From the IMG/VR virus record IMGVR_UViG_3300035156_000206, positions 186,001-250,000 of that record: 64,000 bases of DNA; one strand, 5' to 3'. Shown here piece by piece: positions 22,299-45,454 of the stretch. Positions within the stretch are counted from its first letter, which is position 1. Each line of letters starts with the position of its first letter. Position numbers and translations under genes: made by a program. Under the pieces are notes generated by a model that was not told the origin of the DNA, made no database searches, and worked only from the letters and a program-made list of their open reading frames with translations.

Positions 22299-22976
22299 TT
22301 GGCACACATTTACAAAATAACAAACGCGGTTGATGGTAAGGTATATGTAGGCAAGACCAACCGTACGATCAGCAAGCGATTCAAGCTGCATATATCAAAA
22401 CACAACACCGGCACCACTTATTTGTATAGAGCAATGCGGTTGCATGGACTGGCTAACTTTAGTATATCAGAAATTGAAGAAGTGTGTGAAGTGGATGCAT
22501 CAACACGAGAACAGTTCTGGATAGTAAAACTTGGTACCAAAGTACCTTTGGGATATAATATGACAAATGGTGGGGATGGTGGCGACACTAGTGATTCTCC
22601 ACAATTCCAGAAATATTTAGCCAACCGTGACTATCGTGGTGTTAAAAATCCAATGTACGGTAAACGTGGGAAGGAAAATCCCAACTATGGCAGCTGTCGA
22701 TCAGATGAACAGAAGATAAACATGTCAGTTGGGCTGACTACTGCATGGGAAGCAAATGCCGACCGCAAGGACAAACAGTCCAATAAAATGCAAGGTGTGG
22801 GTAACCCCATGTTTGGGAAAAAGCCTAAAAACACCAAACGTGTTGTCTTTGACGGTGTTCTGTACGATAGTATCGCGGACTGCATGAAAGCAACAAAACG
22901 GTCCTCCTATTATATACAACGACACGGGCACATACAACATGACATTACTACACAAGCTTTGGCAGGAGAAATATAG
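22299..22976 (+). mobile_element. Free-standing GIY-YIG homing endonuclease with NUMOD3-like NPMYGK repeats
   Basis: HIYKITN..GKVYVGKT, RF..H, REQFWI, GYNMTNGGDG, and NPMYGK/NPNYG/NPMFGKK. Confidence 0.88.
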
Positions 22977-27947: not shown

Positions 27948-28868
27948 ATGAAAAATCCATTCACCGCGATGTTAGCTGAACTGAACATCTCCCTGGGCAA
28001 CAAACTGATCGCTCCTTCCTCGAGCAGTGAAGTTGATGCCCTGAGCGACAAAGAAGAAGACAAAGTAGGTGGTATGGAGTTGCCATCTGACGAAGAGGTC
28101 ACAGACCTTGATGATGCCGAAACAGATCTGAGCAAACTAACACTTGACCAGATTATTGCTGCCCTGCAAGCTATCAAGAAAAGCCAAGAACAAGAGGCTG
28201 ATATTGGTGGTCAACGCATTGAGCCACACAGCGACTTTGCAGATGTGGACCCAATGGATCCTCCTGAGAATGTCAATCCTGCTGACAACCGTATGCCAGA
28301 TGAGAATCTGCTGGACGATGAAGGTATCCCTGCTCTGCCAGGTATGCGTCGTTCCCCAGAAGATGAACAGCTTGCTGGTCCTAAGAAGTCCAATCCTTTT
28401 AGCAACGACGAAGAGGAAGACAATTTGGACGATCCAGAAGGCGCGTCTTTTGATGGCTTTGATGCCGATCCTGAAGGCGATGCTGGTGATGTTGACCTCG
28501 ACAAAGAAGGCGACGATGCCGACCCAGTAGATGACTTCGGAGCTGATGTTACCAAAGGTGAAGACCCGATGGGTGGTGATGACATGGGTGCTGAAGATGA
28601 GCCCGATGAAAACCACATGGGAACTATCCGTGCTGTTAAGGGTGCCCACTTAGTCTACAAGCGCCAAGCTGGTGACGGTACATTCTCTGAGCTGTGGACG
28701 TACAACATTGGCGAACACGTCAATGATGCTATTGCCATCAAAAAAGCTATTGTTGCTGGTACAGATATCCCAGAAAACAAGCTACGTTCAGATGACGGTA
28801 CTCAGTCATATGAGCTGGTCACCATGGGTAATGCTCAGTTGCTGAAAATTACTGGACTGCCTAACTAA
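27948..28868 (+). CDS. Highly acidic late protein, probable internal head protein
   Basis: D/E-rich disordered body with a folded C-terminal ~80 aa; late promoter; MLAE near the N-terminus. Confidence 0.6.
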   Translation: MKNPFTAMLAELNISLGNKLIAPSSSSEVDALSDKEEDKVGGMELPSDEEVTDLDDAETDLSKLTLDQIIAALQAIKKSQEQEADIGGQRIEPHSDFADVDPMDPPENVNPADNRMPDENLLDDEGIPALPGMRRSPEDEQLAGPKKSNPFSNDEEEDNLDDPEGASFDGFDADPEGDAGDVDLDKEGDDADPVDDFGADVTKGEDPMGGDDMGAEDEPDENHMGTIRAVKGAHLVYKRQAGDGTFSELWTYNIGEHVNDAIAIKKAIVAGTDIPENKLRSDDGTQSYELVTMGNAQLLKITGLPN

Positions 28869-28875
28869 TTAGGTG

Positions 28876-28940
28876 TTGCCTTTCCGGTCTGGAACAGATA
28901 TAATGTGTCCAACACATTATTATCCCCGGTTCCGGAAAGG
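28876..28940 (+). promoter_or_regulatory. Sigma70-like early promoter with an RBS-overlapping inverted repeat
   Basis: TTGCCT-17-TATAAT (28876-28904); CCTTTCCGG/CCGGAAAGG arms (28879-87 / 28932-40). Confidence 0.65.
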
Positions 28941-28946
28941 ACTAAC

Positions 28947-29555
28947 ATGCTAGTACCAGTATCAGGCAGTCAAGGCTGCGGCAAGACAACCATTATCAAT
29001 GAGTTGTATAAAGCAGGCCACCCAATCATCCAACGCAAGACCTCGCGATCTATTCTGAGTGAATGGGGCGTATCCCTAAACGAAGTCAACCAAGATCCAC
29101 AGTTGACGATGAAGTTCCAGGAAGAAATCATCCGTCGCAAGTTTCTGGACGAAAAAGAAGCCATTGAATCAGACCAAATCGTGTTCACCGAGCGTACGTA
29201 CGCCGACTTGTTCACGTATGCATTGGTTGCATTAGGTCGTGATAACGACTTTGATGACTGGCTTCGTGACTACTACCTTCGGTGTATGACTTACCAACAG
29301 TCGTACTCGATGGTGTTCTATCTCACTGCTGGACACTTCACAGTGCAAAAGGATGGCGTGCGTGCATCCAACAAACAGTACAGCACACTGGTTGACTTGA
29401 GCATGCAAGAGTTCACCCGACAAATGACGTCGCACAATCGACTAAATATCGTCTCCACACCAGTTCTGCAAGAGCGCAAGACCATCATCGAAGTACAGAC
29501 GCTGTCAGCGCTCAACCCAGCTGCATTCAATTTGAACCTTCTCCAGTCGCTGTAA
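28947..29555 (+). CDS. P-loop nucleotide kinase (AAA_28/dNMP-kinase-like)
   Basis: GSQGCGKTT, FTERTYAD, Y.MVFYL and DGVR motifs. Confidence 0.75.
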   Translation: MLVPVSGSQGCGKTTIINELYKAGHPIIQRKTSRSILSEWGVSLNEVNQDPQLTMKFQEEIIRRKFLDEKEAIESDQIVFTERTYADLFTYALVALGRDNDFDDWLRDYYLRCMTYQQSYSMVFYLTAGHFTVQKDGVRASNKQYSTLVDLSMQEFTRQMTSHNRLNIVSTPVLQERKTIIEVQTLSALNPAAFNLNLLQSL

Positions 29556-29672
29556 CATCATAGCAAGGACACCAGTCGAACAAATAATTGGTGTCTTTGT
29601 TCAGAACATGATGTATCATGCGTAGCGTCAGCAGTCTACAAATTGACCAAACATTTGAAAACAGGAAATTAC

Positions 29673-30698
29673 ATGGAATACAACAAAATTCGCAGCACGG
29701 ACTACTCGGAAAAGATGGACGACACCATCTTCACATACGACGAGCAGTTCTACCCACTGGACAGTGACCTACCAGATCCTCAGGTCGATCCTGTGATTCC
29801 TGGCAAGCGTGTCATGATCCAGAAAGTTGGTATTGCTCCAGTCGATCTGCCAGTGAAGTTGCTGCGTCGTGATGGTGGTGTACAGGTTCTCCAGACAGAA
29901 GCATCGCTGTATTGCTCACTGGATGACATGAACGCAAAAGGCCTAAACCTGAGCCGTCTGTATCTGATCATGCACGACACGATCGAAAACCAACTGTCAC
30001 TCGATGGCATCAAGGCAGCTCTGCACAATCTGGCAACCAAGCAAGGTAGCAAGAATGCATACTGCAAGCTGCGCTTCAAGTACCCATGGCATCAGGAAGC
30101 TCTGCGTACCCGTAAGGAACTTGCGGCAATCCCTGAAGGCGCAGTTCACGATCCAATGCTGACGCAGACTCTGTCTGATGGCACTGTGATCAACCGTGAG
30201 AAGATGGTTGGCCACATCGCTTATAAGACCGAGATCGAAGGTCAATACATCGACGGCAAGTACAAGTTCTTCCTGACGGTGGACTATGTGTACTCTTCAA
30301 CTTGCCCATGCAGCTTCGAACTGTCACACAATGCTCGCAACTATCGCAAGCAAGCGGCCAATGCACACAGCCAGCGTTCGATCGCAAAAGTCAAAGTGCA
30401 ATTCAATCCAGACAACGTTGTGTGGGTCGAAGATGTGGTTGAACTGTGCCGTCATCAGATCCCAACGGAAGTTCAGATCGTGGTCAAGCGTCGTGATGAA
30501 CAAGCATTTGCTGAACTGAACGGTTCGAACCTGCTGTTCTCGGAAGACACGGCCCGCCTGTTGTACGAATCACTCGATCAGTGGTACGACTCAGGCAAGA
30601 TCAGCGACTTCAGTGTATCGATCTCCCACGAAGAGTCGTTGCACCCATGGAACGCAATCGCGGTTGTCTACAAAGACATCCCAGGCGGTCTGCGCTAA
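29673..30698 (+). CDS. folE2: GTP cyclohydrolase IB (FolE2)
   Basis: IQKVGI..V.LPV, SSTCPCS.ELS, AHSQRS, KR.DEQ.FAE and HEESLH motifs. Confidence 0.92.
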   Translation: MEYNKIRSTDYSEKMDDTIFTYDEQFYPLDSDLPDPQVDPVIPGKRVMIQKVGIAPVDLPVKLLRRDGGVQVLQTEASLYCSLDDMNAKGLNLSRLYLIMHDTIENQLSLDGIKAALHNLATKQGSKNAYCKLRFKYPWHQEALRTRKELAAIPEGAVHDPMLTQTLSDGTVINREKMVGHIAYKTEIEGQYIDGKYKFFLTVDYVYSSTCPCSFELSHNARNYRKQAANAHSQRSIAKVKVQFNPDNVVWVEDVVELCRHQIPTEVQIVVKRRDEQAFAELNGSNLLFSEDTARLLYESLDQWYDSGKISDFSVSISHEESLHPWNAIAVVYKDIPGGLR

Positions 30699-30703
30699 TC
30701 AAT

Positions 30704-30719
30704 AGGCCCTTCGGGGCCT
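30704..30719 (+). terminator. UUCG tetraloop hairpin (terminator or stabilising stem)
   Basis: AGGCCC-TTCG-GGGCCT followed by GTTTT. Confidence 0.6.
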
Positions 30720-30742
30720 GTTTTAACTAACAAAGGAACAAC

Positions 30743-31222
30743 ATGTCAGAAGTAAAGAAACCAATTTATGTCAGTACGAAAACTTACGGTGCTGAGCGTG
30801 GATTCGCAGTAGCATACCGTCAGTTCAAAGCAGAAAGCCATTGCAACCTAATTCACGGTTATGCGATGGGCTTCCACTTTGAGTTCGAGTCGACCGAACT
30901 AGACGTGCGCAATTGGGTAGTTGACTTTGGCTCACTGAAGACTCTCAAAGAAAAGCTGGACGACTGGTTCGATCATACGTGCCTTGTTGCAACAGACGAT
31001 CCAGAGATCGAGCTGTTCAAGGAAATGCACAAGCGTAAGCTGATCAAGATGGTCGAAGTTGAGCGTACTGGCTGCGAAGGCCTGGCAACGTTCCTCGCAG
31101 AGTACATCAACGAAATCTGGATGGAAGAGAATGGATACCACGGGCGCGTGAAGCTGCGCAAGGTGGAAGTCCGCGAAACCCCAAGCAATTCGGCCATGTG
31201 GCTGAATCCAGACCGCGCTTAA
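30743..31222 (+). CDS. queD: 6-carboxy-5,6,7,8-tetrahydropterin synthase QueD
   Basis: HCNLIHGY (CxxxHG), WVVDFG, FDH and VEVRETPSN motifs. Confidence 0.9.
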   Translation: MSEVKKPIYVSTKTYGAERGFAVAYRQFKAESHCNLIHGYAMGFHFEFESTELDVRNWVVDFGSLKTLKEKLDDWFDHTCLVATDDPEIELFKEMHKRKLIKMVEVERTGCEGLATFLAEYINEIWMEENGYHGRVKLRKVEVRETPSNSAMWLNPDRA

Positions 31223-31282
31223 ACGCCTTATAGATGTGATCTTATAGTGTATAAGATCACATCTATCATCCACAGAGGAAGT

Positions 31283-31603
31283 ATGAATATTAGCCTAGAT
31301 TATGACGATACCTACACACGAGATCCCGCAACTTGGGATAAGGTTATACAAACCTTTCGTGAAGCTGGCAGCAAAGTGTACATAGTCACCTGGCGGTTTG
31401 ACAAACAAACCGCCTTTGATTATGGTGGGCTGTTCGGTGACGAAAGTGGTGTGGTTCGCGAAGCTCTGGATGGTAAAGTCGACGGGATGTTCTTTACAGG
31501 ACGCACAGCTAAGGCAATGTTTATGTATAACCAAGGCATACGAATTGACGTGTGGATTGACGATGACCCACAAGCAATCCTCAGAAACATGCAAGGGCAT
31601 TAA
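31283..31603 (+). CDS. Small HAD-superfamily phosphatase-like protein
   Basis: ISLDYDDT (motif I), IVTWR (motif II), WIDDDP (motif IV). Confidence 0.7.
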   Translation: MNISLDYDDTYTRDPATWDKVIQTFREAGSKVYIVTWRFDKQTAFDYGGLFGDESGVVREALDGKVDGMFFTGRTAKAMFMYNQGIRIDVWIDDDPQAILRNMQGH

Positions 31604-31645
31604 ACTGCAGTAACCCTAACAAGATCAATTTGTTTTAGAAACATG

Positions 31646-31674
31646 TTGATCTTGTTCACGTCCTACCCTATAAT
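31646..31674 (+). promoter_or_regulatory. Sigma70-like early promoter
   Basis: TTGATC-17-TATAAT upstream of the Acb2-like gene. Confidence 0.75.
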
Positions 31675-31705
31675 GTTCTGATCGCCACCACACCTGAGAT
31701 CGAAC

Positions 31706-31957
31706 ATGGACAGCAACATTGCACAAGACGTATTCCACACCACCTACCGTGACCTTACGGAAGAAGAGGTGCAACAACTGACCTTGATCAAGCAAACGGC
31801 AGCATTGCTGTATTCACAGATCAGCCAAATTGCCTACATGCACACTGAAATCAACGTGGTGCGTGAGGTACAAATTGCCCAAGAACGTCTTGAAGAAGCC
31901 ATTATGTGGGCTGGCAAGGCAATGTCGAGCCAACTTTACAACTTGAAGCACAATTAA
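31706..31957 (+). CDS. Acb2/Tad1-hairpin-like cyclic-nucleotide sponge (putative anti-CBASS)
   Basis: YRDLTEEE....IK and RE..IA...LEEAIMWA.KA resemble Acb2 (YRDLSQEE...RVK; RW..I.KT.IQ..MM.IIRAI) and Tad1 (EEALMW). Confidence 0.7.
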   Translation: MDSNIAQDVFHTTYRDLTEEEVQQLTLIKQTAALLYSQISQIAYMHTEINVVREVQIAQERLEEAIMWAGKAMSSQLYNLKHN

Positions 31958-31969
31958 GAACAACACCTG

Positions 31970-31998
31970 TTGATATTGTTCTGAACCTCACCTATAAT
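31970..31998 (+). promoter_or_regulatory. Sigma70-like early promoter
   Basis: TTGATA-17-TATAAT upstream of the dpdL-like gene. Confidence 0.75.
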
Positions 31999-32027
31999 AT
32001 TCGTACAGTAACTTAACAAGGAAACAC

Positions 32028-32435
32028 ATGCCATACATCACAAAAGAAGACGGCTCCAAGTGGCGCATCACTGACACCAAAGTTGTGTTTGCATCATTGC
32101 AGTTCCAAGGCATCCACAACTGGCCTGGTTGTCCGTTTGACGAAGTCGCCTATCTGCGCGACCCACACCGTCATATGTTCCACATCAAAGCCTACAAGGA
32201 AGTCTTCCATGACGACCGCGACGTCGAGTTCATCATGCTCAAGAATGCCATCCAAAAGTACATTGGGGAAACGTATCCTAATGGTGTGTTGGGTGCCAAG
32301 TCGTGCGAAATGCTCGCAGTAGAACTGATCGAAAAGTTCGAGCTCTGCCAGTGTGAAGTAAATGAAGATAACGAGAACGGTGCGATCGTTACTCGCGAAA
32401 CAATGCAACTCGGTAGCCTGTGCGTGGAGCCTTAA
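32028..32435 (+). CDS. dpdL: QueD-paralogue T-fold protein, DpdL-like (putative CDG decarboxylase)
   Basis: LRDPHRHMF matches the LxxxHRHxF signature, plus HDDRDVEFI, SCEMLA and EDNENGA. Confidence 0.75.
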   Translation: MPYITKEDGSKWRITDTKVVFASLQFQGIHNWPGCPFDEVAYLRDPHRHMFHIKAYKEVFHDDRDVEFIMLKNAIQKYIGETYPNGVLGAKSCEMLAVELIEKFELCQCEVNEDNENGAIVTRETMQLGSLCVEP

Positions 32436-32436
32436 T

Positions 32437-33288
32437 ATGATGAACCCATCTATCCCTCTCCAGTCCAATCTGGTCAAAGAGCCACAGTTTTGCATCATCA
32501 CTCCAACGGCATATCTGGAGCAGTACGCTTCACAATCGTCGATGCACCTGATTCTTGCTCACCTGGTTGATACTGATGATGCGTATGCTGCTTACTACGC
32601 AAATCGTGACACCGACGAACTGAAGATCATGGACAACGGCGCCTTTGAATTGGGTCAGTCGTATGATCCAGAAAAGCTGATTGAGCTGGCTCGCAAGTGC
32701 CGTGCTGATGCAATCGTGCTGCCAGACTATCCAGGCCAGAATCAAGACAAGACCATCGAAGCAGCTATCGAATGGGCACCAAAGGTCAAAGCAGCTGGAT
32801 TCAAGACGATGTTCGTTCCTCAGTCGGTAGTTGGTGACACTGAAGGCTGGATCGAAGCATACACTTGGGCTACTCTCGACAACGACCTGATTGATATCAT
32901 CGGTATGTCGATTCTGGGTATCCCGAATGCGCTTCCACGCATTAACCGTGCATATGCTCGTGTTGTGATGACGTCGATGTTGATTGACCAGAACATCTTC
33001 AACTTCCAGAAGCATCACCACTATCTGGGCCTCAATTCGGGACCAGCACTGGAGATTCCTTCGTTGATCAATATGGGTGCTCTCGGATCGTGCGATAGCT
33101 CGAGCCCTGTATGGGCTGGTATTTGTGCAAACGAGTATTCAGAGAACACTGACAGCTTCATGTCAACCAAGAAGATCTCGAAGCATGTTGACTTCAATTA
33201 CCCAATGGTCAAGGATCCAAACGTACACCGTATGATCCAGCGCAACGTTGACCTCACCCTCAGCCTCTTTAAAAAGGAAACAAAGTAA
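32437..33288 (+). CDS. dpdA: TGT-fold deazaguanine DNA transglycosylase-like protein (DpdA family, possibly DpdA3)
   Basis: IMDNGAFE, VLPD, FVPQ, HYLG and SCDSS TIM-barrel motifs, adjacent to dpdL/queD/folE2. Confidence 0.7.
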   Translation: MMNPSIPLQSNLVKEPQFCIITPTAYLEQYASQSSMHLILAHLVDTDDAYAAYYANRDTDELKIMDNGAFELGQSYDPEKLIELARKCRADAIVLPDYPGQNQDKTIEAAIEWAPKVKAAGFKTMFVPQSVVGDTEGWIEAYTWATLDNDLIDIIGMSILGIPNALPRINRAYARVVMTSMLIDQNIFNFQKHHHYLGLNSGPALEIPSLINMGALGSCDSSSPVWAGICANEYSENTDSFMSTKKISKHVDFNYPMVKDPNVHRMIQRNVDLTLSLFKKETK

Positions 33289-33500
33289 TGACCACAGCAG
33301 TTGAAGTCCAAGCAATGGACGAATTGTGGGTCGAAATCGTCGGTTTCGTCCCAAAAAAAGAGCAGAAAGACCTAGCTCTGAAGGTTGTCCGCATCTTCGA
33401 AGATAACCTAGATGCCAATGGCGCCGAATCAGACCACCCGATGCTGCGTAAGGCATCGAATGAGCTGAATGGTGAAGAAGACGAAGAGGACGAAGACTGA
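33288..33500 (+). CDS. Small acidic hypothetical protein
   Basis: 70 aa; TAATG/TGATG coupled. Confidence 0.6.
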   Translation: MTTAVEVQAMDELWVEIVGFVPKKEQKDLALKVVRIFEDNLDANGAESDHPMLRKASNELNGEEDEEDED

Positions 33501-34018
33501 TGTTGGCGAACCCTACCGATATGATCGCGCAGGGGTTCGTCAAGAACCTCAAAGACGTGAACAAGCAAGTACAGCCAAATGCAATCGACTTCACTGTTGA
33601 CCAGATCCAGATGATCGGTGATGGCACATCAGAGCACGATTGCATCATTGGCGAGAGCAAGAAAGAGATGGCTCCACAAACGCCAATCGCTGCGAATATG
33701 GAGGGATTCTTTCCTCTAATTGCCAACCGGTCGTACGATATCTCGTCAGATATGTACGTTGAAGTGCCAGCGGGATATGCTGCCATCCTAGTGCTACGGT
33801 CGACCTTTGTTCGAAACGGTATGATCTTGGCATCCGGTCTCTATGACAGTGGCTTCAAAGGCAACATTGGTGCTGTTCTGCACACCAACAATGCAAATGC
33901 ACTGGTTGAAAAGGGCGTTCGCATTGGCCAAATCATGTTTGTTGAATCCAACTCACATGGCGTCTATGCAGGTGGCTACAACACAGCAGATGGCATTCAC
34001 TGGAAAGACAAAGCATGA
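33500..34018 (+). CDS. Trimeric dUTPase/dCTP-deaminase superfamily protein
   Basis: QVQPNAID, RST..RNG, SGLYDSGFKG, RIGQI and Y.GGY motifs. Confidence 0.85.
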   Translation: MLANPTDMIAQGFVKNLKDVNKQVQPNAIDFTVDQIQMIGDGTSEHDCIIGESKKEMAPQTPIAANMEGFFPLIANRSYDISSDMYVEVPAGYAAILVLRSTFVRNGMILASGLYDSGFKGNIGAVLHTNNANALVEKGVRIGQIMFVESNSHGVYAGGYNTADGIHWKDKA

Positions 34019-34386
34019 TCAATGTTACTCCTACTACAATGAGCCTCAAGCCAGGAGAAGTTCTGGTATTGACGGTCGATGTAGCCAACCTACCTGCACA
34101 AAAGGCAGCCGAAGTAATGAGGCACGTCAAGGAGTTCAACGAATTGGCGGTGCATGCCCGGGAGAACGGCAACGTTGTATTGGTAAAATCCAACCGGGTG
34201 CAAGCAGAAGTGCTGTCGTATGGTCCAGAAGATCGTGTTGTGGCATACGTAGATATTGGTAATCTGCCTAGACAGGCGGCCGAAAAGTATCTGGAGCATG
34301 TGCGGGAGCAGTTGAAAGAATCGATCCCGTCGGACCAAACGTTGGTGGTAGCCAAGGGCAACAAGTTTGAGGTCCAGAAAGCATGA
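34015..34386 (+). CDS. Small protein made of two portal-clip-like repeats
   Basis: TVDVANLPAQKAAEVMRHV and YVDIGNLPRQAAEKYLEHV resemble T4-type portal [19 protein letters not shown] (recalled from memory). Confidence 0.6.
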   Translation: MINVTPTTMSLKPGEVLVLTVDVANLPAQKAAEVMRHVKEFNELAVHARENGNVVLVKSNRVQAEVLSYGPEDRVVAYVDIGNLPRQAAEKYLEHVREQLKESIPSDQTLVVAKGNKFEVQKA

Positions 34387-34646
34387 AAACGATCATTCAC
34401 GTCAACCAACACGTCATCAAGTCGAACCGTAAGGATGGGGTGAATGATCCTGTTCTTACAGTCAAGACCTACAAGGACAACACATACGCGCACAGCGTCG
34501 AAATCAAAGGCGATAGCAAGGTGGTATATAGCCCTGACAAGCCTTTGAGTTGTGGGGCCCACGTATGGATTGAGACCCATGCAGAGGTTATCTGCCACCT
34601 AAACCCAACAGAAGAAGAAAATGAAAAAACGACCAGCAATGTTTGA
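34383..34646 (+). CDS. Hypothetical phage protein (IIHVNQH.I...P.LTVK...PLSCGA.VWIET)
   Basis: 87 aa; motif familiar from phage hypotheticals; function unknown. Confidence 0.7.
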   Translation: MKTIIHVNQHVIKSNRKDGVNDPVLTVKTYKDNTYAHSVEIKGDSKVVYSPDKPLSCGAHVWIETHAEVICHLNPTEEENEKTTSNV

Positions 34647-35244
34647 CCTAGTCCTGGCACTAGATTCTGAAACGTCCGGAATTGCCATGGGCTCTCTTGA
34701 TCCCACTTACAGGTCCGATCCGGGCGTGGGTGCCGAACGGTACCAAGCCGTATCCTTTGGACTGATTGTGGCAGATGTCCACACTCTGAAACCTATCGAT
34801 TCGTTGTACGTCGAGATTAAGCACGATGACAACTACTACAATTGGTCCGATGGCGCTGAGCGAGTGCACGGCCTGTCCCGTGAATACCTGGAAGCTAACG
34901 GCATGTCACTGGTTGACGCCGCCACTAAAATCCTGAACTTCATCGAAAAGTACTTCGGTCCGTATCAGGCAATCCGTAAGCTGCCAATGCTCGGCCACAA
35001 CGTAGCCACATTCGACCGCTACTTTTTGCATGACCTACTGAGCCACATCGACGTTGAGATCCAATTCGGCAATCGACACATCGATACGTTCTCGCTGGGT
35101 GTAGTTCTGATGGATCTATTTTCTTCGGATGAACTGTTTGACTTTTTCGAACTAAAGCGTGATGCTGAGAAGCATAATGCACTTGATGATGCGAAGTATG
35201 CTCTCAAGGTGGCTCGTCTGATGAAAAAGAACTTCCAAGCCTAA
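34639..35244 (+). CDS. DEDDh 3'-5' exonuclease (DnaQ/epsilon-like)
   Basis: LDSETSG, GHNVATFD, IDT and HNALDDA motifs. Confidence 0.88.
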   Translation: MFDLVLALDSETSGIAMGSLDPTYRSDPGVGAERYQAVSFGLIVADVHTLKPIDSLYVEIKHDDNYYNWSDGAERVHGLSREYLEANGMSLVDAATKILNFIEKYFGPYQAIRKLPMLGHNVATFDRYFLHDLLSHIDVEIQFGNRHIDTFSLGVVLMDLFSSDELFDFFELKRDAEKHNALDDAKYALKVARLMKKNFQA

Positions 35245-35254
35245 GGGGAACCGT

Positions 35255-35704
35255 ATGACCGTAGCAAAAATTCGTTATTCGTACAACCAAATCACGCAGA
35301 TGTGCGAAGATCTGGCTGAAATTATTAACGACATGGATGAAGCCGAGAAGCCAAAGACTATCGTTGGCTTGATCCGTGGTGGTTGCATTCCAGCTGTGAT
35401 CTTGTCGCACTTGACCAAGATCCCTTGCAAGATGTTGTCCTATTCTTCGCATCAAGGATTTGGCGGCGGTGAGAATGACAACCAGATCCCAGGTGACATT
35501 CTGGAAGGTGTGATGCAACTGTTTGTAGATGATATCTGCGATTCAGGCTACACCCTGAAAGAAGTGATGGAAGCGTGTGGTGAAGGTATGGGCAACCTAT
35601 CAGCCTCATTGATCTACCGTGATCACACTAAGTCACAATTCGATCCAGACATGTATGCCACGCGCATCACCGATTCAAGCTGGGTAGTGTTTCCCTGGGA
35701 ATAA
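35255..35704 (+). CDS. Purine phosphoribosyltransferase (Gpt-like)
   Basis: IVGLIRGGCIPA, LFVDDICDSGYTL (PRPP-binding) and WVVFPWE motifs. Confidence 0.88.
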   Translation: MTVAKIRYSYNQITQMCEDLAEIINDMDEAEKPKTIVGLIRGGCIPAVILSHLTKIPCKMLSYSSHQGFGGGENDNQIPGDILEGVMQLFVDDICDSGYTLKEVMEACGEGMGNLSASLIYRDHTKSQFDPDMYATRITDSSWVVFPWE

Positions 35705-35746
35705 TCCCAAGCATTGCCCATCCACTACAATAGTACAAGGTATAAA

Positions 35747-36199
35747 ATGAAATTAAGCTCCACACTGTCATGGGCCGATAAGCTGGTCCTGGTTAGCCGC
35801 TACGAATTGAGCGAGACCGAAGCATGTACCGCATTTGGCGTCACCAAGCAAGAGCTAGTCGTCGCAAAGAATCTGCTCGCTAAAGGTGTGTTTGCACCGA
35901 ATGAAACGCTGAATACATCCATTTACAGCGACTTCTTTGTCAAGCTCCGCAGTGGTGAATTGGATCACCTTCAGAAGACGTTTAAACCGAAAGGTGCACG
36001 TCCAAGCAAGATCACGATGGCATTTGAAGCCATCACGGATTCGCCACAAAAGGTATCCGAGATCATCGAGCGCTATGGCGTATCTTTGGCAGTACTACGG
36101 CAGAGCAAGCGCTTTGACAAAGGCAACGTTGGTCAAATCCATATCCGGAAGGATAAGGATACCAGCGAATTGATGGTGTGGCGCGACAAACAGGACTAA
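35747..36199 (+). CDS. Hypothetical protein
   Basis: ORF in operon context. Confidence 0.6.
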   Translation: MKLSSTLSWADKLVLVSRYELSETEACTAFGVTKQELVVAKNLLAKGVFAPNETLNTSIYSDFFVKLRSGELDHLQKTFKPKGARPSKITMAFEAITDSPQKVSEIIERYGVSLAVLRQSKRFDKGNVGQIHIRKDKDTSELMVWRDKQD

Positions 36200-36201
36200 A
36201 C

Positions 36202-36402
36202 ATGAACATTACTGAAGCGTTTGCTCCCCAAATTGGGGATGAAAGTACCAACTTGTATTTTGTTGGGTTTGCCGAAGGCAAAATGGAAATCCTGAAGGTC
36301 AAGGAAAGCGACCTTCCTTCGATGGATGCTAAGTGGGAACTGATGGACCCCGCATATGATGTTGGGTCCGTACTGCCACGACTGAAACAGAAGCTGGATT
36401 GA
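36202..36402 (+). CDS. Small hypothetical protein
   Basis: AGGA RBS; 66 aa. Confidence 0.5.
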   Translation: MNITEAFAPQIGDESTNLYFVGFAEGKMEILKVKESDLPSMDAKWELMDPAYDVGSVLPRLKQKLD

Positions 36403-36404
36403 AT

Positions 36405-36821
36405 ATGAGCATACTTGAGCAACCAATGTATTCAAAAGACTTCACTATTCAGTTCACTGATCTTGATGGAGTACCGCATGAGGCAACTGTAGCATTGGGG
36501 CGCAACGTCGTGGCGATATCAAAAATCGATTACGCCGAAGCCTCATTTGGGATAGGCGTAGGTAGTACGGATGTCAAATTCTACGATAGTGTGGGTGCAC
36601 TAAAGGGGTTGGACTTTTTGGTTGCTGAAGGTGCCTTTAATGTTGTGATCCACCTAATGGATAAGCACCACAACGTCAAAGTGGTTCGGACACTGCAAGG
36701 CTGTGGGATTCGGAAGACCGTCTTTCAGTCTCTACTGGCTCATTCGTGCAATGATGTGATGGGGACATCCTTCGGAATCATGTTCAACACATACACAAAC
36801 ACTTACCCAGATACGGAGTAA
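36405..36821 (+). CDS. Hypothetical protein, possibly tail-tube-like beta fold
   Basis: F.IQF...RNVV.ISK...VKFYD...IHLMD...L.GC.I pattern is loosely similar to T4 gp19-like tubes. Confidence 0.4.
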   Translation: MSILEQPMYSKDFTIQFTDLDGVPHEATVALGRNVVAISKIDYAEASFGIGVGSTDVKFYDSVGALKGLDFLVAEGAFNVVIHLMDKHHNVKVVRTLQGCGIRKTVFQSLLAHSCNDVMGTSFGIMFNTYTNTYPDTE

Positions 36822-36825
36822 TACC

Positions 36826-37356
36826 ATGGTAGTAAACACAGGCGAGATGATCCTCTTCTGGCAACCCGATTCGATCTACTCGAACTGGTATCCAAACACT
36901 CCGTTGGTGCTAGCCGAGTACCCAAAGCTGAAGTTTGACAACTCTGAGGCAGCATTCATGTTCCTCAAAGCAAAGGCCTTTGGGGATGATGTGATGGCTC
37001 TCATGATTCTGAACAACCAGGATCCTTGGGAGACCAAGAAGATGGGTCGCCGCATCAATGCGTACAATGAAGAAAAGTGGGCAGAAGTTCGCGAAGATGC
37101 GATGTTTGCGGCCTGCTACGCAAAGTTCTCCCAGAATGAAGACCTGAAAGCAGAGTTGCTTTCAACTGGTACTTTGCTGTTGGTCGAAGCAAGTCCAGTA
37201 GATAAGATCTGGGGAATCGGCCTGGCACCTAATGAGCCAAGGGCTCGTCGAGTTGAAACGTGGCAGGGCCTCAATCTGTTGGGTAAAATCCTGATGGAAG
37301 TACGGACGGTACTTGTCAATGAAATGGCTCGCGATGTAGCGGAGACGGCACAATGA
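36826..37356 (+). CDS. NADAR (YbiA/DUF1768) hydrolase
   Basis: YSNWY, SEAAFM..KA..F.D, KK.GR, AKFSQN..L...LL.TG, LVEASP.D.IWGIG and G.NLLG.ILM motifs. Confidence 0.92.
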   Translation: MVVNTGEMILFWQPDSIYSNWYPNTPLVLAEYPKLKFDNSEAAFMFLKAKAFGDDVMALMILNNQDPWETKKMGRRINAYNEEKWAEVREDAMFAACYAKFSQNEDLKAELLSTGTLLLVEASPVDKIWGIGLAPNEPRARRVETWQGLNLLGKILMEVRTVLVNEMARDVAETAQ

Positions 37357-37619
37357 GGATCGACACACTAATTTCACTGTGCCAGATGTATTCACGAGAA
37401 GGACACTCCATTCATGAACAAATGGATGATGTGATGGAGGGGAGGGACCTGGAAGAACTGAACCCAAACGCTCTAAAAATCATTCGTGCATTCTTTGAGA
37501 GAGCAGCCCGTGCCGACGTGGATGGTGCTGACGGTCTGGCAGAGATGATCGAGGATCACCAAGCCACGCTTGTCGTTTCTGACAATCGCATATATAATAG
37601 TTCATTATCACAGGAGTAA
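37353..37619 (+). CDS. Hypothetical protein
   Basis: 88 aa; ATGA coupled. Confidence 0.55.
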   Translation: MRIDTLISLCQMYSREGHSIHEQMDDVMEGRDLEELNPNALKIIRAFFERAARADVDGADGLAEMIEDHQATLVVSDNRIYNSSLSQE

Positions 37620-37624
37620 TTTTT

Positions 37625-38524
37625 ATGGCAAAGTACGAATGGTCGGAAGTATTTCAATCGATCGAAGGTGAGGCTCGATATTCAGGCCACCCAACGGCTT
37701 ATATCCGTTTCACGATGTGCAACTTCCAATGCCGTGGGTTCAACAACCCAGAGAAGCTGGATACCACATCACTAGACGTGTTGGGTTTCAACCCAGCCGA
37801 CTACAAAGACATCTACTCGATCCCGCTGATCACGCGCGGCTGCGACTCGATCTATTCGTGGGATGACAAATTCAAGCATATGTGGAAGAAAGGCACTCAG
37901 GATGACCTCGTAAAGGAACTGATTGAAGTGCTGCCACACAACAGCTTCGTTAATCCTAATTCGGGCAAGCGCACTATTCTGTCGTTGACGGGCGGAGAGC
38001 CAACGCTGCGCATGAAGTTCATCCCTGAGCTGCTTGCGCACCCAGACATGAAAGAATGTCGCCACATCCTGATCGAGACGAACTGCTCTGTCAAGCTGAA
38101 AGAAGAGCACATGCACCAACTGGCTGAATGGGCAGGCGATCATGGCGGGCGTGGTCCCGGACGCGTAACGTGGAGCAATTCACCAAAGCTGTCGGTGAGT
38201 GGTGAAGACTGGTCGGAAGCAATTCGTCCTGAAATTGCTGTGATGCAATTGCAATCAGCGTCGATGTCTGGTTATTTTGACCAGTACTTCAAGTTCGTAT
38301 GTGGACCAAACGAAGCAGACTTCGCTGAAGTGGAGAATGCGATGGAAGAGTACTACAGTGCTGGCATTTCGCGCGACACTGATGTGTACGTAATGCCAAC
38401 TGCTTGTACCGAAGAGCAACAGCAGACTGTGTCCGCTACAGTGGCCAACATGTGCATTCAACGTGGTTACATCTACTGCCACCGCATCCAGAACTCTGTA
38501 TTCGGAAACGGTGTGGGGACATAA
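37625..38524 (+). CDS. queE: 7-carboxy-7-deazaguanine synthase QueE (radical SAM)
   Basis: FQSIEGE.RY.G.P, CNFQCRGF...CDS, LTGGEP, IETN, SPKL, YFKFV and YVMP motifs. Confidence 0.92.
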   Translation: MAKYEWSEVFQSIEGEARYSGHPTAYIRFTMCNFQCRGFNNPEKLDTTSLDVLGFNPADYKDIYSIPLITRGCDSIYSWDDKFKHMWKKGTQDDLVKELIEVLPHNSFVNPNSGKRTILSLTGGEPTLRMKFIPELLAHPDMKECRHILIETNCSVKLKEEHMHQLAEWAGDHGGRGPGRVTWSNSPKLSVSGEDWSEAIRPEIAVMQLQSASMSGYFDQYFKFVCGPNEADFAEVENAMEEYYSAGISRDTDVYVMPTACTEEQQQTVSATVANMCIQRGYIYCHRIQNSVFGNGVGT

Positions 38525-42077: not shown

Positions 42078-42095
42078 TCGTGATAAATACCACGA
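42078..42095 (+). promoter_or_regulatory. Late promoter TAAATA (42084-89) in a small hairpin loop
   Basis: TCGTG-ATAAATAC-CACGA upstream of the collagen fibre ATG at 42122. Confidence 0.6.
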
Positions 42096-42121
42096 TCAAT
42101 ACTAGAACGGAGCAAAAATTA

Positions 42122-45454
<3,333 letters not shown>

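What the first reader, a model, noticed from the sequence alone, without database searches (positions are those of the whole stretch)
29673..38524. 7-deazaguanine DNA-modification cluster predicted to make unsubstituted 7-deazaguanine (dDG) or dCDG
Seen: FolE2, QueD and QueE (GTP to CDG), a second T-fold protein with LxxxHRHxF, and a TGT-fold protein (DNGAFE/LPD/HYLG/SCDSS). No QueC, QueF or ArcS occurs in the window. Known: DpdL (LxxxHRHxF) is the predicted CDG decarboxylase, and DpdA-family transglycosylases insert deazaguanines into phage DNA; DpdA3 is linked to complete G replacement. The use of the zinc-independent FolE2 rather than FolE is notable.
Basis: partly seen in the sequence, partly recalled or inferred. 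Interest (0 to 1): 0.68.

Follow-up and report, generated by a model that had tools for sequence, protein, structure and literature searches.

The report
Jumbo-phage 7-deazaguanine DNA modification cluster
An uncultured giant phage from a soil-crust metagenome has the same enzyme set as the only phages known to replace every guanine in their DNA with 7-deazaguanine, built here with a zinc-independent first enzyme, so it probably makes restriction-resistant DNA in the same way.

Summary
On the + strand of window 29643-38524 lie FolE2, QueD, a DpdL-type T-fold protein (LRDPHRHMF), a TGT-fold transglycosylase and QueE. The transglycosylase matches the DpdA3 proteins of phages phiST and immuto (hhalign 98%) but not DpdA1 of phage 9g (2%). 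No QueC, QueF, ArcS, DpdM, DpdN or type-I FolE is found in the 292-kb contig. A complete 350-kb relative also has FolE2, DpdL and DpdA but no QueC.

This is the gene set of Cellulophaga phage phiST, whose DNA carries dDG in place of all dG. The most likely product is therefore 2'-deoxy-7-deazaguanine; dCDG is the less likely alternative.

The new points are:
- FolE2 has no match in 50,697 deposited phage genomes.
- The transglycosylase forms its own deep clade beside the reference DpdA3 proteins and is abundant in metagenomes.
- A small purine phosphoribosyltransferase in the cluster has phage homologues almost only in phiST-like and immuto phages, the two groups measured at 100% replacement. 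This points to guanine salvage or a nucleotide-level step that the published model does not include.

DpdL and DpdA3 activities have never been shown biochemically, so the product remains a prediction.

The parts
28905..29555 (+). P-loop kinase-like protein (AAA_28/NadR-type; weak thymidylate-kinase PHROG). It is a conserved neighbour directly upstream of FolE2. Its role is inferred: nucleoside or nucleotide kinase.
   Evidence: PF13521 7.4e-13; phrog_2107 2e-10. It sits next to FolE2 in L006, L011, L012, L015, L018, L025 and L026. The only phage-isolate match is weak.
29643..30698 (+). FolE2 (GTP cyclohydrolase IB): GTP to dihydroneopterin triphosphate. The likely true start is the ATG at 29673.
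   Evidence: PF02649 1.4e-55; NF010200 215.1 bits against a cut-off of 215. 78% identical in the 315-kb relative L006. No tblastn match in 50,697 phage records and no PHROG.
30743..31222 (+). QueD (6-carboxytetrahydropterin synthase), phage type with CxxxHGY instead of CxxxHGH.
   Evidence: PF01242 9e-18; phrog_2389 1.3e-40. 34% identical to phiST QueD, which has the same HGY variant. The nearest solved relative is A. baumannii QueD2, 7v0f, 6.7e-6.
31247..31603 (+). Small protein of unknown function with HAD-like DxDxT and DD motifs. Not conserved in relatives, so probably not a core part.
   Evidence: phrog_4256 8e-22 and phrog_4919 4e-21, both of unknown function. No Pfam match even at E 10. 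Absent from all related loci. The motifs were read from the translation.
32028..32435 (+). DpdL-type T-fold protein, the predicted 7-carboxy-7-deazaguanine (CDG) decarboxylase.
   Evidence: LRDPHRHMF motif. tblastn: phiST gp040 36%, 7e-11; ACP17 39%, 2e-14. Shared blocks HNDRDxEF, SCE and EDxENGA. AF2 pLDDT 93, and the top PDB match is E. coli QueD 4ntk, 1.7e-5. 1708 homologues in metagenomes.
32437..33288 (+). DpdA3-like guanine transglycosylase, a minimal TGT TIM barrel of 283 aa.
   Evidence: AF2 pLDDT 85, pTM 0.85. Foldseek PDB: arcTGT 1j2b 7e-10 and bacterial TGTs. BFVD: phiST M4SLA5 9e-17, TM 0.80/0.87. hhalign 98% to phiST and immuto DpdA3, 2% to 9g DpdA1. No Pfam, PHROG or NCBIfam match. 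965 homologues.
33500..34018 (+). Trimeric dUTPase of the dCTP-deaminase-like (archaeal) type. It is the only dUTPase-fold gene in the contig and lies directly downstream of dpdA in almost all relatives.
   Evidence: PF22769 2.1e-14 and PF00692 7.4e-6. PDB 9w59 and 2yzj dUTPases. Single dUTPase hit in the genome. Adjacent to DpdA in the IMG/VR loci, Vibrio phage D479 and Rhizobium phage RHph_I1_18.
34621..35244 (+). DEDDh 3'-5' exonuclease, a conserved neighbour. phiST also has a DEDDh exonuclease just upstream of QueD.
   Evidence: PF00929 9.7e-7; phrog_192 3e-20. Conserved in the related loci. phiST gp035.
35255..35704 (+). Small 6-oxopurine phosphoribosyltransferase. Inferred role: it removes and recycles the guanine displaced from DNA, or it makes a deazaguanine nucleotide.
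   Evidence: PF00156 2.2e-12. PDB 1vdm purine PRTase 1.3e-12. tblastn in phages finds only immuto (4 records), phiST-like (5 records) and one unverified scaffold. Within 10 kb of DpdA in 11 IMG/VR loci.
35714..36199 (+). Conserved protein of unknown function (161 aa) that travels with the cluster.
   Evidence: No family match. 68% identical in L006/L007 and present in 11 further loci.
36826..37356 (+). NADAR-domain hydrolase, probably a separate counter-defence against guanine ADP-ribosylation (DarTG1) and not a pathway enzyme.
   Evidence: PF08719 5.4e-45. Literature on phage NADARs: PMC11825919, PMC11543638. Present in L006 and L011.
37625..38524 (+). QueE (radical-SAM CDG synthase), phage type with cysteines C32-x3-C36-x36-C73.
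   Evidence: phrog_2076 6.6e-47. The QueE N-terminal signature matches TIGR03963 and PDB QueE 6nhl and 4njg. Alignment with phiST QueE and L006 QueE.

Best explanation
The cluster is a phage system that replaces guanine in the phage's own DNA with 7-deazaguanine.

Proposed pathway:
1. FolE2 opens GTP to dihydroneopterin triphosphate.
2. QueD converts that to 6-carboxytetrahydropterin.
3. The radical-SAM enzyme QueE contracts the ring to 7-carboxy-7-deazaguanine (CDG).
4. The QueD paralogue DpdL removes the carboxyl group to give free 7-deazaguanine.
5. The DpdA3-like transglycosylase swaps this base for guanine in DNA, giving 2'-deoxy-7-deazaguanine (dDG).

By analogy with phiST, dDG probably sits at most or all G positions. 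This should block restriction enzymes and other nucleases that read the N7 side of G.

The neighbouring purine PRTase most likely takes the displaced guanine back to GMP. That would keep the reversible exchange running forward and refill the GTP pool. The dUTPase, kinase and exonuclease are nucleotide-pool helpers.

What is shown: the gene identities, folds, homologies, absences and conservation. What is inferred: every enzymatic step of DpdL, DpdA and the PRTase, and the extent of replacement.
For: - Family and fold assignments.
- DpdL is homologous to phiST gp040 and ACP17 DpdL and carries the diagnostic LxxxHRHxF motif.
- DpdA is related to the phiST and immuto DpdA3 proteins at hhalign 98%, E about 1e-13, over 208-245 columns. 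It is as close to each of them as they are to each other: 25%, 24% and 23% identity.
- phiST has the same set (FolE, QueD, QueE, DpdL, DpdA3, no QueC) and contains 302,000 dDG per 10^6 nucleotides, with no dG and no CDG.
- No QueC, QueF, ArcS, DpdM or DpdN in the 292-kb contig, and no QueC in a complete 350-kb relative that keeps FolE2, DpdL and DpdA.
- Intact orthologues at 50-80% identity occur on dozens of viral contigs in conserved order.
- The jumbo phage PA5oct, which has a DpdL homologue, resists G-dependent restriction enzymes (PMC12191111).
- The PRTase family is almost confined to the two phage groups with measured 100% replacement.
Against: - DpdL decarboxylase activity and DpdA3 transglycosylation have never been shown. 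Co-expression of dpdL and dpdA from phiST and ACP17 in E. coli gave no dDG.
- There is no chemical data for this phage. Only assembled contigs from a biocrust metagenome hold it.
- The contig is about 84% complete.
- The DpdA clade is separate from the reference DpdA3 proteins, and its monophyly with them is only weakly supported.
- CATG and other G-containing palindromes are still under-represented. This does not fit a genome fully immune to restriction, although the test is weak.
- The PRTase is absent from other DpdL/DpdA3-like phages: D479, RHph_I1_18, MA9V-3 and ACP17.
Confidence: 0.6

Rival explanations
1. Same product, different route. The deazaguanine enters DNA through the nucleotide pool and not by base exchange on finished DNA. 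There are two versions. In one, the PRTase makes a 7-deazaguanine ribonucleotide that is phosphorylated, reduced and polymerised. In the other, the DpdA3-like enzyme exchanges the base on dGMP or dGTP, and the kinase and polymerase do the rest. In both, an NTP pyrophosphatase removes the competing dGTP.
For: - Clusters of the DpdA3 type repeatedly carry a PRTase, an NTP pyrophosphatase and a P-loop kinase. phiST has gp039 (MazG-like), gp041 (ATPase) and gp064 (PRTase). immuto has genes 60 (PRTase), 63 (NTP pyrophosphohydrolase) and 68 (thymidylate kinase). D479 has a dNMP kinase next to dpdA.
- DpdA3 is tied to 100% replacement, unlike DpdA1 and DpdA2.
- DpdA3 plus DpdL failed to modify DNA in E. 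coli, and an ADG nucleoside was seen in CP220-infected cells.
- The genome also has a MazG gene at contig position 79337-79540.
Against: - The enzyme next to dpdA here has a dUTPase fold, is the genome's only dUTPase and most resembles true dUTPases, so it need not act on dGTP.
- The kinases of the different phages are not detectably homologous.
- The PRTase is missing from several DpdL/DpdA3-like phages.
- These clusters sit inside replication and nucleotide-metabolism modules, where such genes are common anyway.
- The published view is post-replicative insertion.
Confidence: 0.2
2. The product is dCDG. DpdL is not a decarboxylase, or it does something else, and the transglycosylase inserts CDG itself.
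For: - The DpdL function is only predicted.
- VH7D DpdA2 can insert CDG at low efficiency in a queC mutant, and dCDG exists in a Sulfolobus virus.
- The paper itself considers that DpdA3 may insert CDG.
Against: - phiST, with the same gene set, had no detectable CDG and full dDG.
- DpdL is strongly conserved: 32 invariant columns in 27 homologues, including H47, R48 and H49.
- DpdL co-occurs with the QueC-less pathway in a complete relative.
Confidence: 0.1
3. The phage only boosts CDG supply. The host's QueC (and other host enzymes) turn it into preQ0 or a derivative, so the DNA carries dPreQ0, dADG or dG+.
For: - The contig is 84% complete, and most bacteria encode QueC (13 of 14 control genomes).
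- Vibrio phage D479, which has a related DpdA and DpdL, carries a weak QueC-family match elsewhere in its genome.
Against: - No QueC in a complete 350-kb relative.
- The presence of DpdL argues for a CDG-consuming branch.
- phiST's DNA carried dDG only, with no dPreQ0, dADG or dG+ detected; that its Cellulophaga host has its own QueC is assumed here, not tested.
Confidence: 0.07
4. The genes serve tRNA or folate metabolism (queuosine or pterin supply as auxiliary metabolic genes) and do not modify DNA.
For: FolE2, QueD and QueE are shared with queuosine biosynthesis. FolE2 also feeds folate synthesis.
Against: - The transglycosylase does not match the tRNA-TGT family PF01702, and it groups with the DNA-modifying DpdA3 proteins.
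- There are no tRNA genes in the window.
- There is no QueC or QueF to reach preQ1.
- The cluster lies in the DNA replication module.
Confidence: 0.03

Closest known systems
Cellulophaga phage phiST (and phi13:1, phi19:2) dDG system: FolE, QueD, QueE, DpdL, DpdA3
   Same: - The same five-step gene set without QueC.
- A homologous DpdL (36% identity, same LxxxHRHxF motif).
- A homologous DpdA3 (25% identity, hhalign 98%, TM 0.80/0.87).
- The same phage-type QueD (CxxxHGY).
- A homologous small PRTase, and a DEDDh exonuclease next to the cluster.
   Different: - FolE2 replaces the unrelated type-I FolE.
- A trimeric dUTPase takes the place of the MazG-like pyrophosphatase.
- The kinases are not homologous.
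- Here the PRTase sits inside the cluster; in phiST it is 18 kb away.
- The host phage is a T4-like jumbo phage of at least 292 kb from soil crust, not a 78-kb marine phage.
- The DpdA belongs to a separate deep clade.
- The product has been measured only in phiST.
Flavobacterium phage vB_FspM_immuto fdPreQ1 system (DpdA3, FolE, QueD, QueE, QueC, QueF, DpdN)
   Same: - A DpdA3 homologue (24% identity, hhalign 98%).
- A homologous PRTase located between QueE and FolE.
- An NTP pyrophosphatase and a kinase flank dpdA.
- Replacement is complete.
   Different: immuto continues to preQ1 and formylates it. [quoted passage not shown] The window genome has none of QueC, QueF or DpdN and has DpdL instead.
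Vibrio phage D479, Rhizobium phage RHph_I1_18, Aeromonas phage Ahp1 and Vibrio phage Bakedbeans (uncharacterised isolates)
   Same: These are the closest DpdA proteins among isolates (32-41% identity). In D479 and RHph_I1_18, whose neighbourhoods were read, DpdL lies upstream and the same dUTPase type follows dpdA.
   Different: D479 and RHph_I1_18 are annotated with a type-I GTP cyclohydrolase and have no PRTase; the Ahp1 and Bakedbeans neighbourhoods were not examined. D479 has a weak QueC-family match. No modification data were found for them, and the dpdA and dpdL genes are annotated as hypothetical or under an unrelated domain name.
DpdA1/DpdA2 systems (Enterobacteria phage 9g dG+, CAjan dPreQ0, Vibrio VH7D dPreQ1) and the bacterial dpd cluster
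   Same: The pathway is the same up to CDG. The transglycosylase has a TGT fold and shares the SCDSS active-site motif with 9g DpdA1.
   Different: Those systems need QueC and insert preQ0 or preQ1 at 0.1-30% of G positions. The window DpdA shows no overall profile similarity to 9g DpdA1 (hhalign 2%).

Membership tests
DpdL (predicted CDG decarboxylase, Hutinet 2023) | T-fold, QueD-like structure | tested here: met
   AF2 model with pLDDT 93. The top PDB matches are E. coli QueD 4ntk (1.7e-5, TM 0.6-0.7) and PTPS enzymes.
DpdL (predicted CDG decarboxylase, Hutinet 2023) | Signature LxxxHRHxF in place of QueD's CxxxHGH | tested here: met
   L43-RDP-H47-R48-H49-M-F51. L43, H47, R48, H49 and F51 are invariant in 27 homologues. 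The motif aligns with phiST FLSLNHRHLF.
DpdL (predicted CDG decarboxylase, Hutinet 2023) | Sequence homology to the founding members (phiST CGPG_00067/gp040, ACP17) | tested here: met
   tblastn: phiST 36%, 7e-11; ACP17 39%, 2e-14.
DpdL (predicted CDG decarboxylase, Hutinet 2023) | Occurs with FolE, QueD, QueE and DpdA, without QueC | tested here: met
   The complete relative G008 shows the same pattern.
DpdL (predicted CDG decarboxylase, Hutinet 2023) | Decarboxylates CDG to 7-deazaguanine | not testable with these tools
   This has not been shown for any member.
DpdA3 subfamily of DNA guanine transglycosylases | TGT-like TIM-barrel fold | tested here: met
   Foldseek: arcTGT 1j2b 7e-10, and bacterial TGTs at about 1e-8.
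DpdA3 subfamily of DNA guanine transglycosylases | Closer to the reference DpdA3 proteins (phiST, immuto) than to other DpdA subfamilies | tested here: met
   hhalign 98% to both DpdA3 proteins and 2% to 9g DpdA1. In BFVD, phiST scores TM 0.80/0.87, while the phage TGT/DpdA-like entries lower in the list score about 0.45-0.58 by the query. Pairwise identity equals that between phiST and immuto. DpdA2, DpdA4, bDpdA and Campylobacter DpdA3 were not compared by sequence.
DpdA3 subfamily of DNA guanine transglycosylases | Forms one clade with the reference DpdA3 proteins | tested here: inconclusive
   In the ML tree the window clade (23 rows, support 93/90) is sister to a weakly supported clade (81/29) holding phiST, MA9V-3 and immuto. 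The only outgroup is a single very long DpdA1 branch.
DpdA3 subfamily of DNA guanine transglycosylases | Conserved acidic active-site residues | tested here: met
   D66 (MDNGAFE), D97 (LPD) and D220 (SCDSS) are invariant in 32 homologues. They align with LDNGA and STDS of phiST, and with SCDSS of 9g DpdA1. That these are the catalytic residues is inferred from knowledge of the TGT family.
DpdA3 subfamily of DNA guanine transglycosylases | Complete replacement of G in virion DNA | not testable with these tools
   No isolate and no raw reads exist. Only assembled contigs hold the sequence.
FolE2 (GTP cyclohydrolase IB) | Match to the family models above the curated cut-off | tested here: met
   PF02649: 189 bits against a cut-off of 25. 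NF010200: 215.1 bits against 215, which only just passes.
QueD (6-carboxytetrahydropterin synthase) | PTPS fold family, catalytic Cys and His-rich metal site (CxxxHGH) | tested here: inconclusive
   PF01242 at 64.8 bits passes and Cys34 is present. However, the motif is CNLIHGY, and the first His of E. coli QueD (AAHR) is Tyr here. The same variant occurs in phiST's QueD, whose pathway works in vivo. TIGR03367 scores below its cut-off.
QueE (CDG synthase, radical SAM) | QueE signature and three cluster cysteines | tested here: met
   phrog_2076 6.6e-47. The N-terminal EVFxSxEGE...CNxxC block aligns with solved QueEs. C32, C36 and C73 are invariant in the 3-way alignment, with a 36-residue insert. 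All NCBIfam QueE models score below their cut-offs.

The most novel reading that the evidence does not exclude
Complete guanine replacement by DpdA3-type systems may need a dedicated purine phosphoribosyltransferase, helped by an NTP pyrophosphatase and a kinase. This component is missing from the published pathway. There are two possible roles. The PRTase may remove the guanine released by the reversible base exchange and recycle it to GTP, closing a guanine-to-deazaguanine cycle. Alternatively, the deazaguanine may reach DNA through the nucleotide pool, with the TGT-like enzyme or the PRTase acting on free bases and nucleotides and not on DNA. In this jumbo-phage lineage the whole route may also be zinc-sparing, since it uses FolE2 and a QueD2-like QueD.
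Probability: 0.25. Interest if true: 0.72.

Novelty: new variant of a known kind. Interest (0 to 1): 0.5.

Why it matters
dDG has been measured in only three closely related Cellulophaga phages. This cluster suggests the same chemistry is widespread. About 1,000 DpdA and 1,700 DpdL homologues were found in metagenomes, many of them on contigs of 100-350 kb.

The lineage offers fresh DpdL and DpdA3 proteins from a different host range for the biochemistry that failed with the phiST and ACP17 proteins. It also gives the first phage case of FolE2 feeding a deazaguanine pathway.

The restricted distribution of the PRTase yields a testable idea for how DpdA3 systems reach 100% replacement while DpdA1 and DpdA2 systems stop at 30% or less. 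7-Deazaguanine DNA resists many nucleases and is useful in biotechnology, so an enzymatic route to fully substituted DNA has practical value.

Tried and rejected
- **Palindrome avoidance** as an indirect sign of full modification. CATG (z -13.6), CTAG and several G-containing 6-mers are still under-represented, and AT-only palindromes are not specially avoided. This is uninformative, or mildly against full protection.
- **Sequencing reads.** Only two runs of biocrust metagenomes hold the stretch, both kept as assembled contigs. Contigs cannot show base modification.
- **Kinase distribution.** The AAA_28 kinase has a single weak phage match, so it says nothing. The kinases of phiST, immuto and D479 are not detectably homologous to it.
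- **The 306-aa ORF at 27948-28868**, conserved upstream of the kinase. It is an acidic, disordered protein with no family match and no usable Atlas hit, so it was not taken as an enzyme.
- **ACP17's 342-aa neighbour of DpdL.** It is not related to this DpdA family (hhalign 0.2%).
- **The faecal phage scaffold MT835497.1.** It carries the PRTase, but no deazaguanine genes were found in its 55.7 kb. It is the one exception to the PRTase/DpdA3 link.
- **Promoter and terminator scans.** Counts are no higher than in shuffled sequence. The good -35/-10 matches just upstream of dpdL (31970-31998), the kinase (28876-28904) and queE (37570-37598) are noted only as possibilities.
- **Megablast of the whole cluster against phage genomes:** no match.
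- **Tools left unused.** The large profile search and complex prediction were not used because the questions were settled without them. No alternative genetic code was needed.

Full report
**Setting**

The window is positions 186001-250000 of a 291,967-bp linear viral contig, estimated at 84% complete. The only public runs that hold it are biocrust metagenomes, kept as assembled contigs. The cluster lies on the + strand inside a T4-like replication module. That module has a gp32-like SSB, UvsX/RecA, a UvsW helicase, a clamp loader and a GIY-YIG homing endonuclease upstream, and a collagen-repeat protein downstream. GC content is even at about 48%. Megablast of the cluster against 50,697 phage records finds nothing.

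Five genes were reported and all are present:
- FolE2 (29643/29673-30698): PF02649 at 1.4e-55, and NCBI's FolE2 equivalog at 215.1 bits against a cut-off of 215.
- QueD (30743-31222): PF01242 and the phage QueD PHROG at 1.3e-40.
- QueE (37625-38524): the phage QueE PHROG at 6.6e-47. It carries the QueE N-terminal signature seen in solved QueEs.
- The 135-aa protein at 32028-32435 carries LRDPHRHMF.
- The 283-aa protein at 32437-33288 carries MDNGAFE, LPDYP, HHYLGLN and SCDSS.

The last two proteins match no Pfam, PHROG function or NCBIfam model, so they were examined further.

**DpdL**

- tblastn finds the founding DpdL proteins: phiST gp040 at 36% and 7e-11, and ACP17 at 39% and 2e-14. It also finds homologues in PA5oct-like jumbo phages and others.
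- The alignment shares the LxxxHRHxF, HNDRDxEF, SCE and EDxENGA blocks. H47, R48 and H49 are invariant in 27 metagenomic homologues.
- The AlphaFold model (pLDDT 93) matches E. coli QueD and PTPS structures best.
- This meets every definition of DpdL that can be tested by computation. The paper that named DpdL could not show its activity.

**The transglycosylase**

- The AlphaFold model (pLDDT 85, pTM 0.85) matches archaeosine and bacterial tRNA-guanine transglycosylases in the PDB at 1e-10 to 1e-8.
- Among viral models it matches phiST M4SLA5, the DpdA3 of the dDG phage, at 9e-17 with TM 0.80/0.87 and rmsd 2.5 Å. The phage TGT/DpdA-like entries lower in the list reach TM of only about 0.45-0.58 by the query.
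- Profile comparison gives 98% probability (E about 1e-13) to both phiST and immuto DpdA3. It gives 2% to DpdA1 of phage 9g, where only the SCDSS motif aligns.
- Pairwise, the window protein is as close to phiST (25%) and immuto (24%) as those two are to each other (23%).
- In an ML tree, the window protein sits in a well-supported clade of 23 sequences with Vibrio phage D479 and Rhizobium phage RHph_I1_18. This clade is sister to a weakly supported group holding the reference DpdA3 proteins. I therefore call it DpdA3-like and leave formal membership open.

**What is absent**

- QueC, QueF, canonical TGT, DUF3109 (DpdM) and DUF5591 (ArcS) give no match in the 292 kb.
- tblastn with 9g Gat-QueC, immuto QueF, DpdN and FolE, and phiST FolE also gives nothing.
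- Because the contig is incomplete, I checked relatives. Eleven IMG/VR records carrying related DpdA genes were searched. The only one with QueC is a distant 178-kb phage. A complete 350,089-bp relative with terminal repeats (DpdA 54% identical) has no QueC but does have DpdL and FolE2.

**What it most likely makes**

The gene set is that of Cellulophaga phage phiST: a GTP cyclohydrolase, QueD, QueE, DpdL and DpdA3, without QueC. phiST DNA contained dDG in place of all dG, and no CDG was detected. I therefore favour dDG, with confidence of about 0.6 for the full statement. dCDG is a minor alternative, and host-QueC-dependent products are less likely still. Independent support that DpdL-bearing jumbo phages modify G comes from PA5oct, which resists G-dependent restriction enzymes.

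**What is new**

1. FolE2 has no tblastn match in 50,697 phage records and no PHROG. It is nevertheless conserved beside the kinase in many relatives of this lineage and in the more distant L033. The phage QueD's nearest solved relative is A. baumannii QueD2, the low-zinc paralogue. The first two steps may therefore be independent of zinc supply; this is an inference.
2. The family is large. 965 DpdA and 1708 DpdL homologues passed E 1e-3 in the metagenome protein collection, many of them on contigs of 100-350 kb.
3. The gene order dpdL-dpdA-dUTPase-exonuclease-(PRTase)-orf161-queE is conserved.
4. The small purine PRTase (best solved match P. horikoshii 1vdm) has phage homologues in only 10 of 50,697 records. 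Four are immuto records and five are phiST-like records. These are exactly the two groups with measured 100% replacement through DpdA3. The tenth is an unverified faecal scaffold without detectable deazaguanine genes. In immuto the PRTase lies between queE and folE. The 2023 paper does not mention it. It is not universal: D479, RHph_I1_18, MA9V-3 and ACP17 lack any PF00156 gene.

My preferred reading of the PRTase is that it removes and recycles the guanine displaced by the reversible exchange. The rival reading is a nucleotide-pool route. That reading also draws on the NTP pyrophosphatases and kinases that flank dpdA3 genes. It draws as well on the failed heterologous tests. Against over-reading these neighbours, the pyrophosphatase here is the genome's only dUTPase and resembles true dUTPases.

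**Limits**

No step after CDG has biochemical proof anywhere, and there is no chemical data for this phage. Palindrome statistics do not show relaxed restriction avoidance. No reads tool was run on the window.

Noticed in passing
window 35255-35704; L052 6822-7217; L054 5001-5429: This small purine PRTase family is found, among 50,697 phage records, almost only in the two phage groups with measured 100% 7-deazaguanine replacement (immuto and phiST-like). One unverified faecal scaffold is the exception. It is absent from several other DpdL/DpdA3-like phages. The paper that defined the pathway does not discuss it.
   Followed up: partly
window 30743-31222: The phage-type QueD has CxxxHGY instead of CxxxHGH, and a Tyr where E. 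coli QueD has its first metal-binding His. phiST's QueD shares this variant. The nearest solved relative is the low-zinc paralogue QueD2 (7v0f). Together with FolE2, this hints at a zinc-sparing pathway.
   Followed up: partly
window 37625-38524: QueE has an unusual cysteine spacing, C32-x3-C36-x36-C73, with a roughly 34-residue insert before the third cysteine. The QueE of the 315-kb relative shares this spacing. phiST QueE has C-x3-C-x7-C.
   Followed up: partly
window 36826-37356: A NADAR-domain hydrolase (PF08719, 5e-45) sits inside the cluster and is conserved in close relatives. Phage NADARs are reported to reverse guanine ADP-ribosylation by DarT1, so this is probably a separate counter-defence that also concerns guanine.
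   Followed up: partly
window 27948-28868: A 306-aa strongly acidic, Asp/Glu-rich, predicted disordered protein is conserved just upstream of the kinase-FolE2 pair. In some relatives it lies directly upstream of dpdA. It has no family match. A DNA mimic or an internal protein is a guess.
   Followed up: partly
window 22299-22976: A GIY-YIG homing endonuclease with an I-TevI-like DNA-binding domain lies directly before, and slightly overlaps, the clamp-loader gene.
   Followed up: no
window 42080-45454: A 1124-aa protein has seven stretches of collagen triple-helix repeats (PF01391, 4.5e-71). It is probably a fibre or decoration protein.
   Followed up: no
window 34015-34386: A 123-aa ORF has a short match (residues 73-107) to the T4 portal protein family and to phrog_23805. 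It looks like a small protein sharing one motif, not a portal gene.
   Followed up: no
L010 (Vibrio phage D479, record 153872-154066): D479 has DpdL and the closest isolate DpdA. It also has a partial QueC-family match (32.8 bits, model positions 133-201) about 100 kb from its dpdA cluster. Its product may therefore differ from dDG.
   Followed up: no
L050 6458-7339 (Chryseobacterium phage MA9V-3): The DpdL homologue (53% identical to the window's) forms the C-terminal third of a 293-aa annotated protein. This suggests a fusion with an unknown N-terminal domain, next to a phiST-like DpdA3.
   Followed up: no
whole contig (G000): CATG is strongly under-represented (1318 observed against 1716 expected, z -13.6). 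TTGCAA, CAGCTG and AAGCTT are also depleted.
   Followed up: partly
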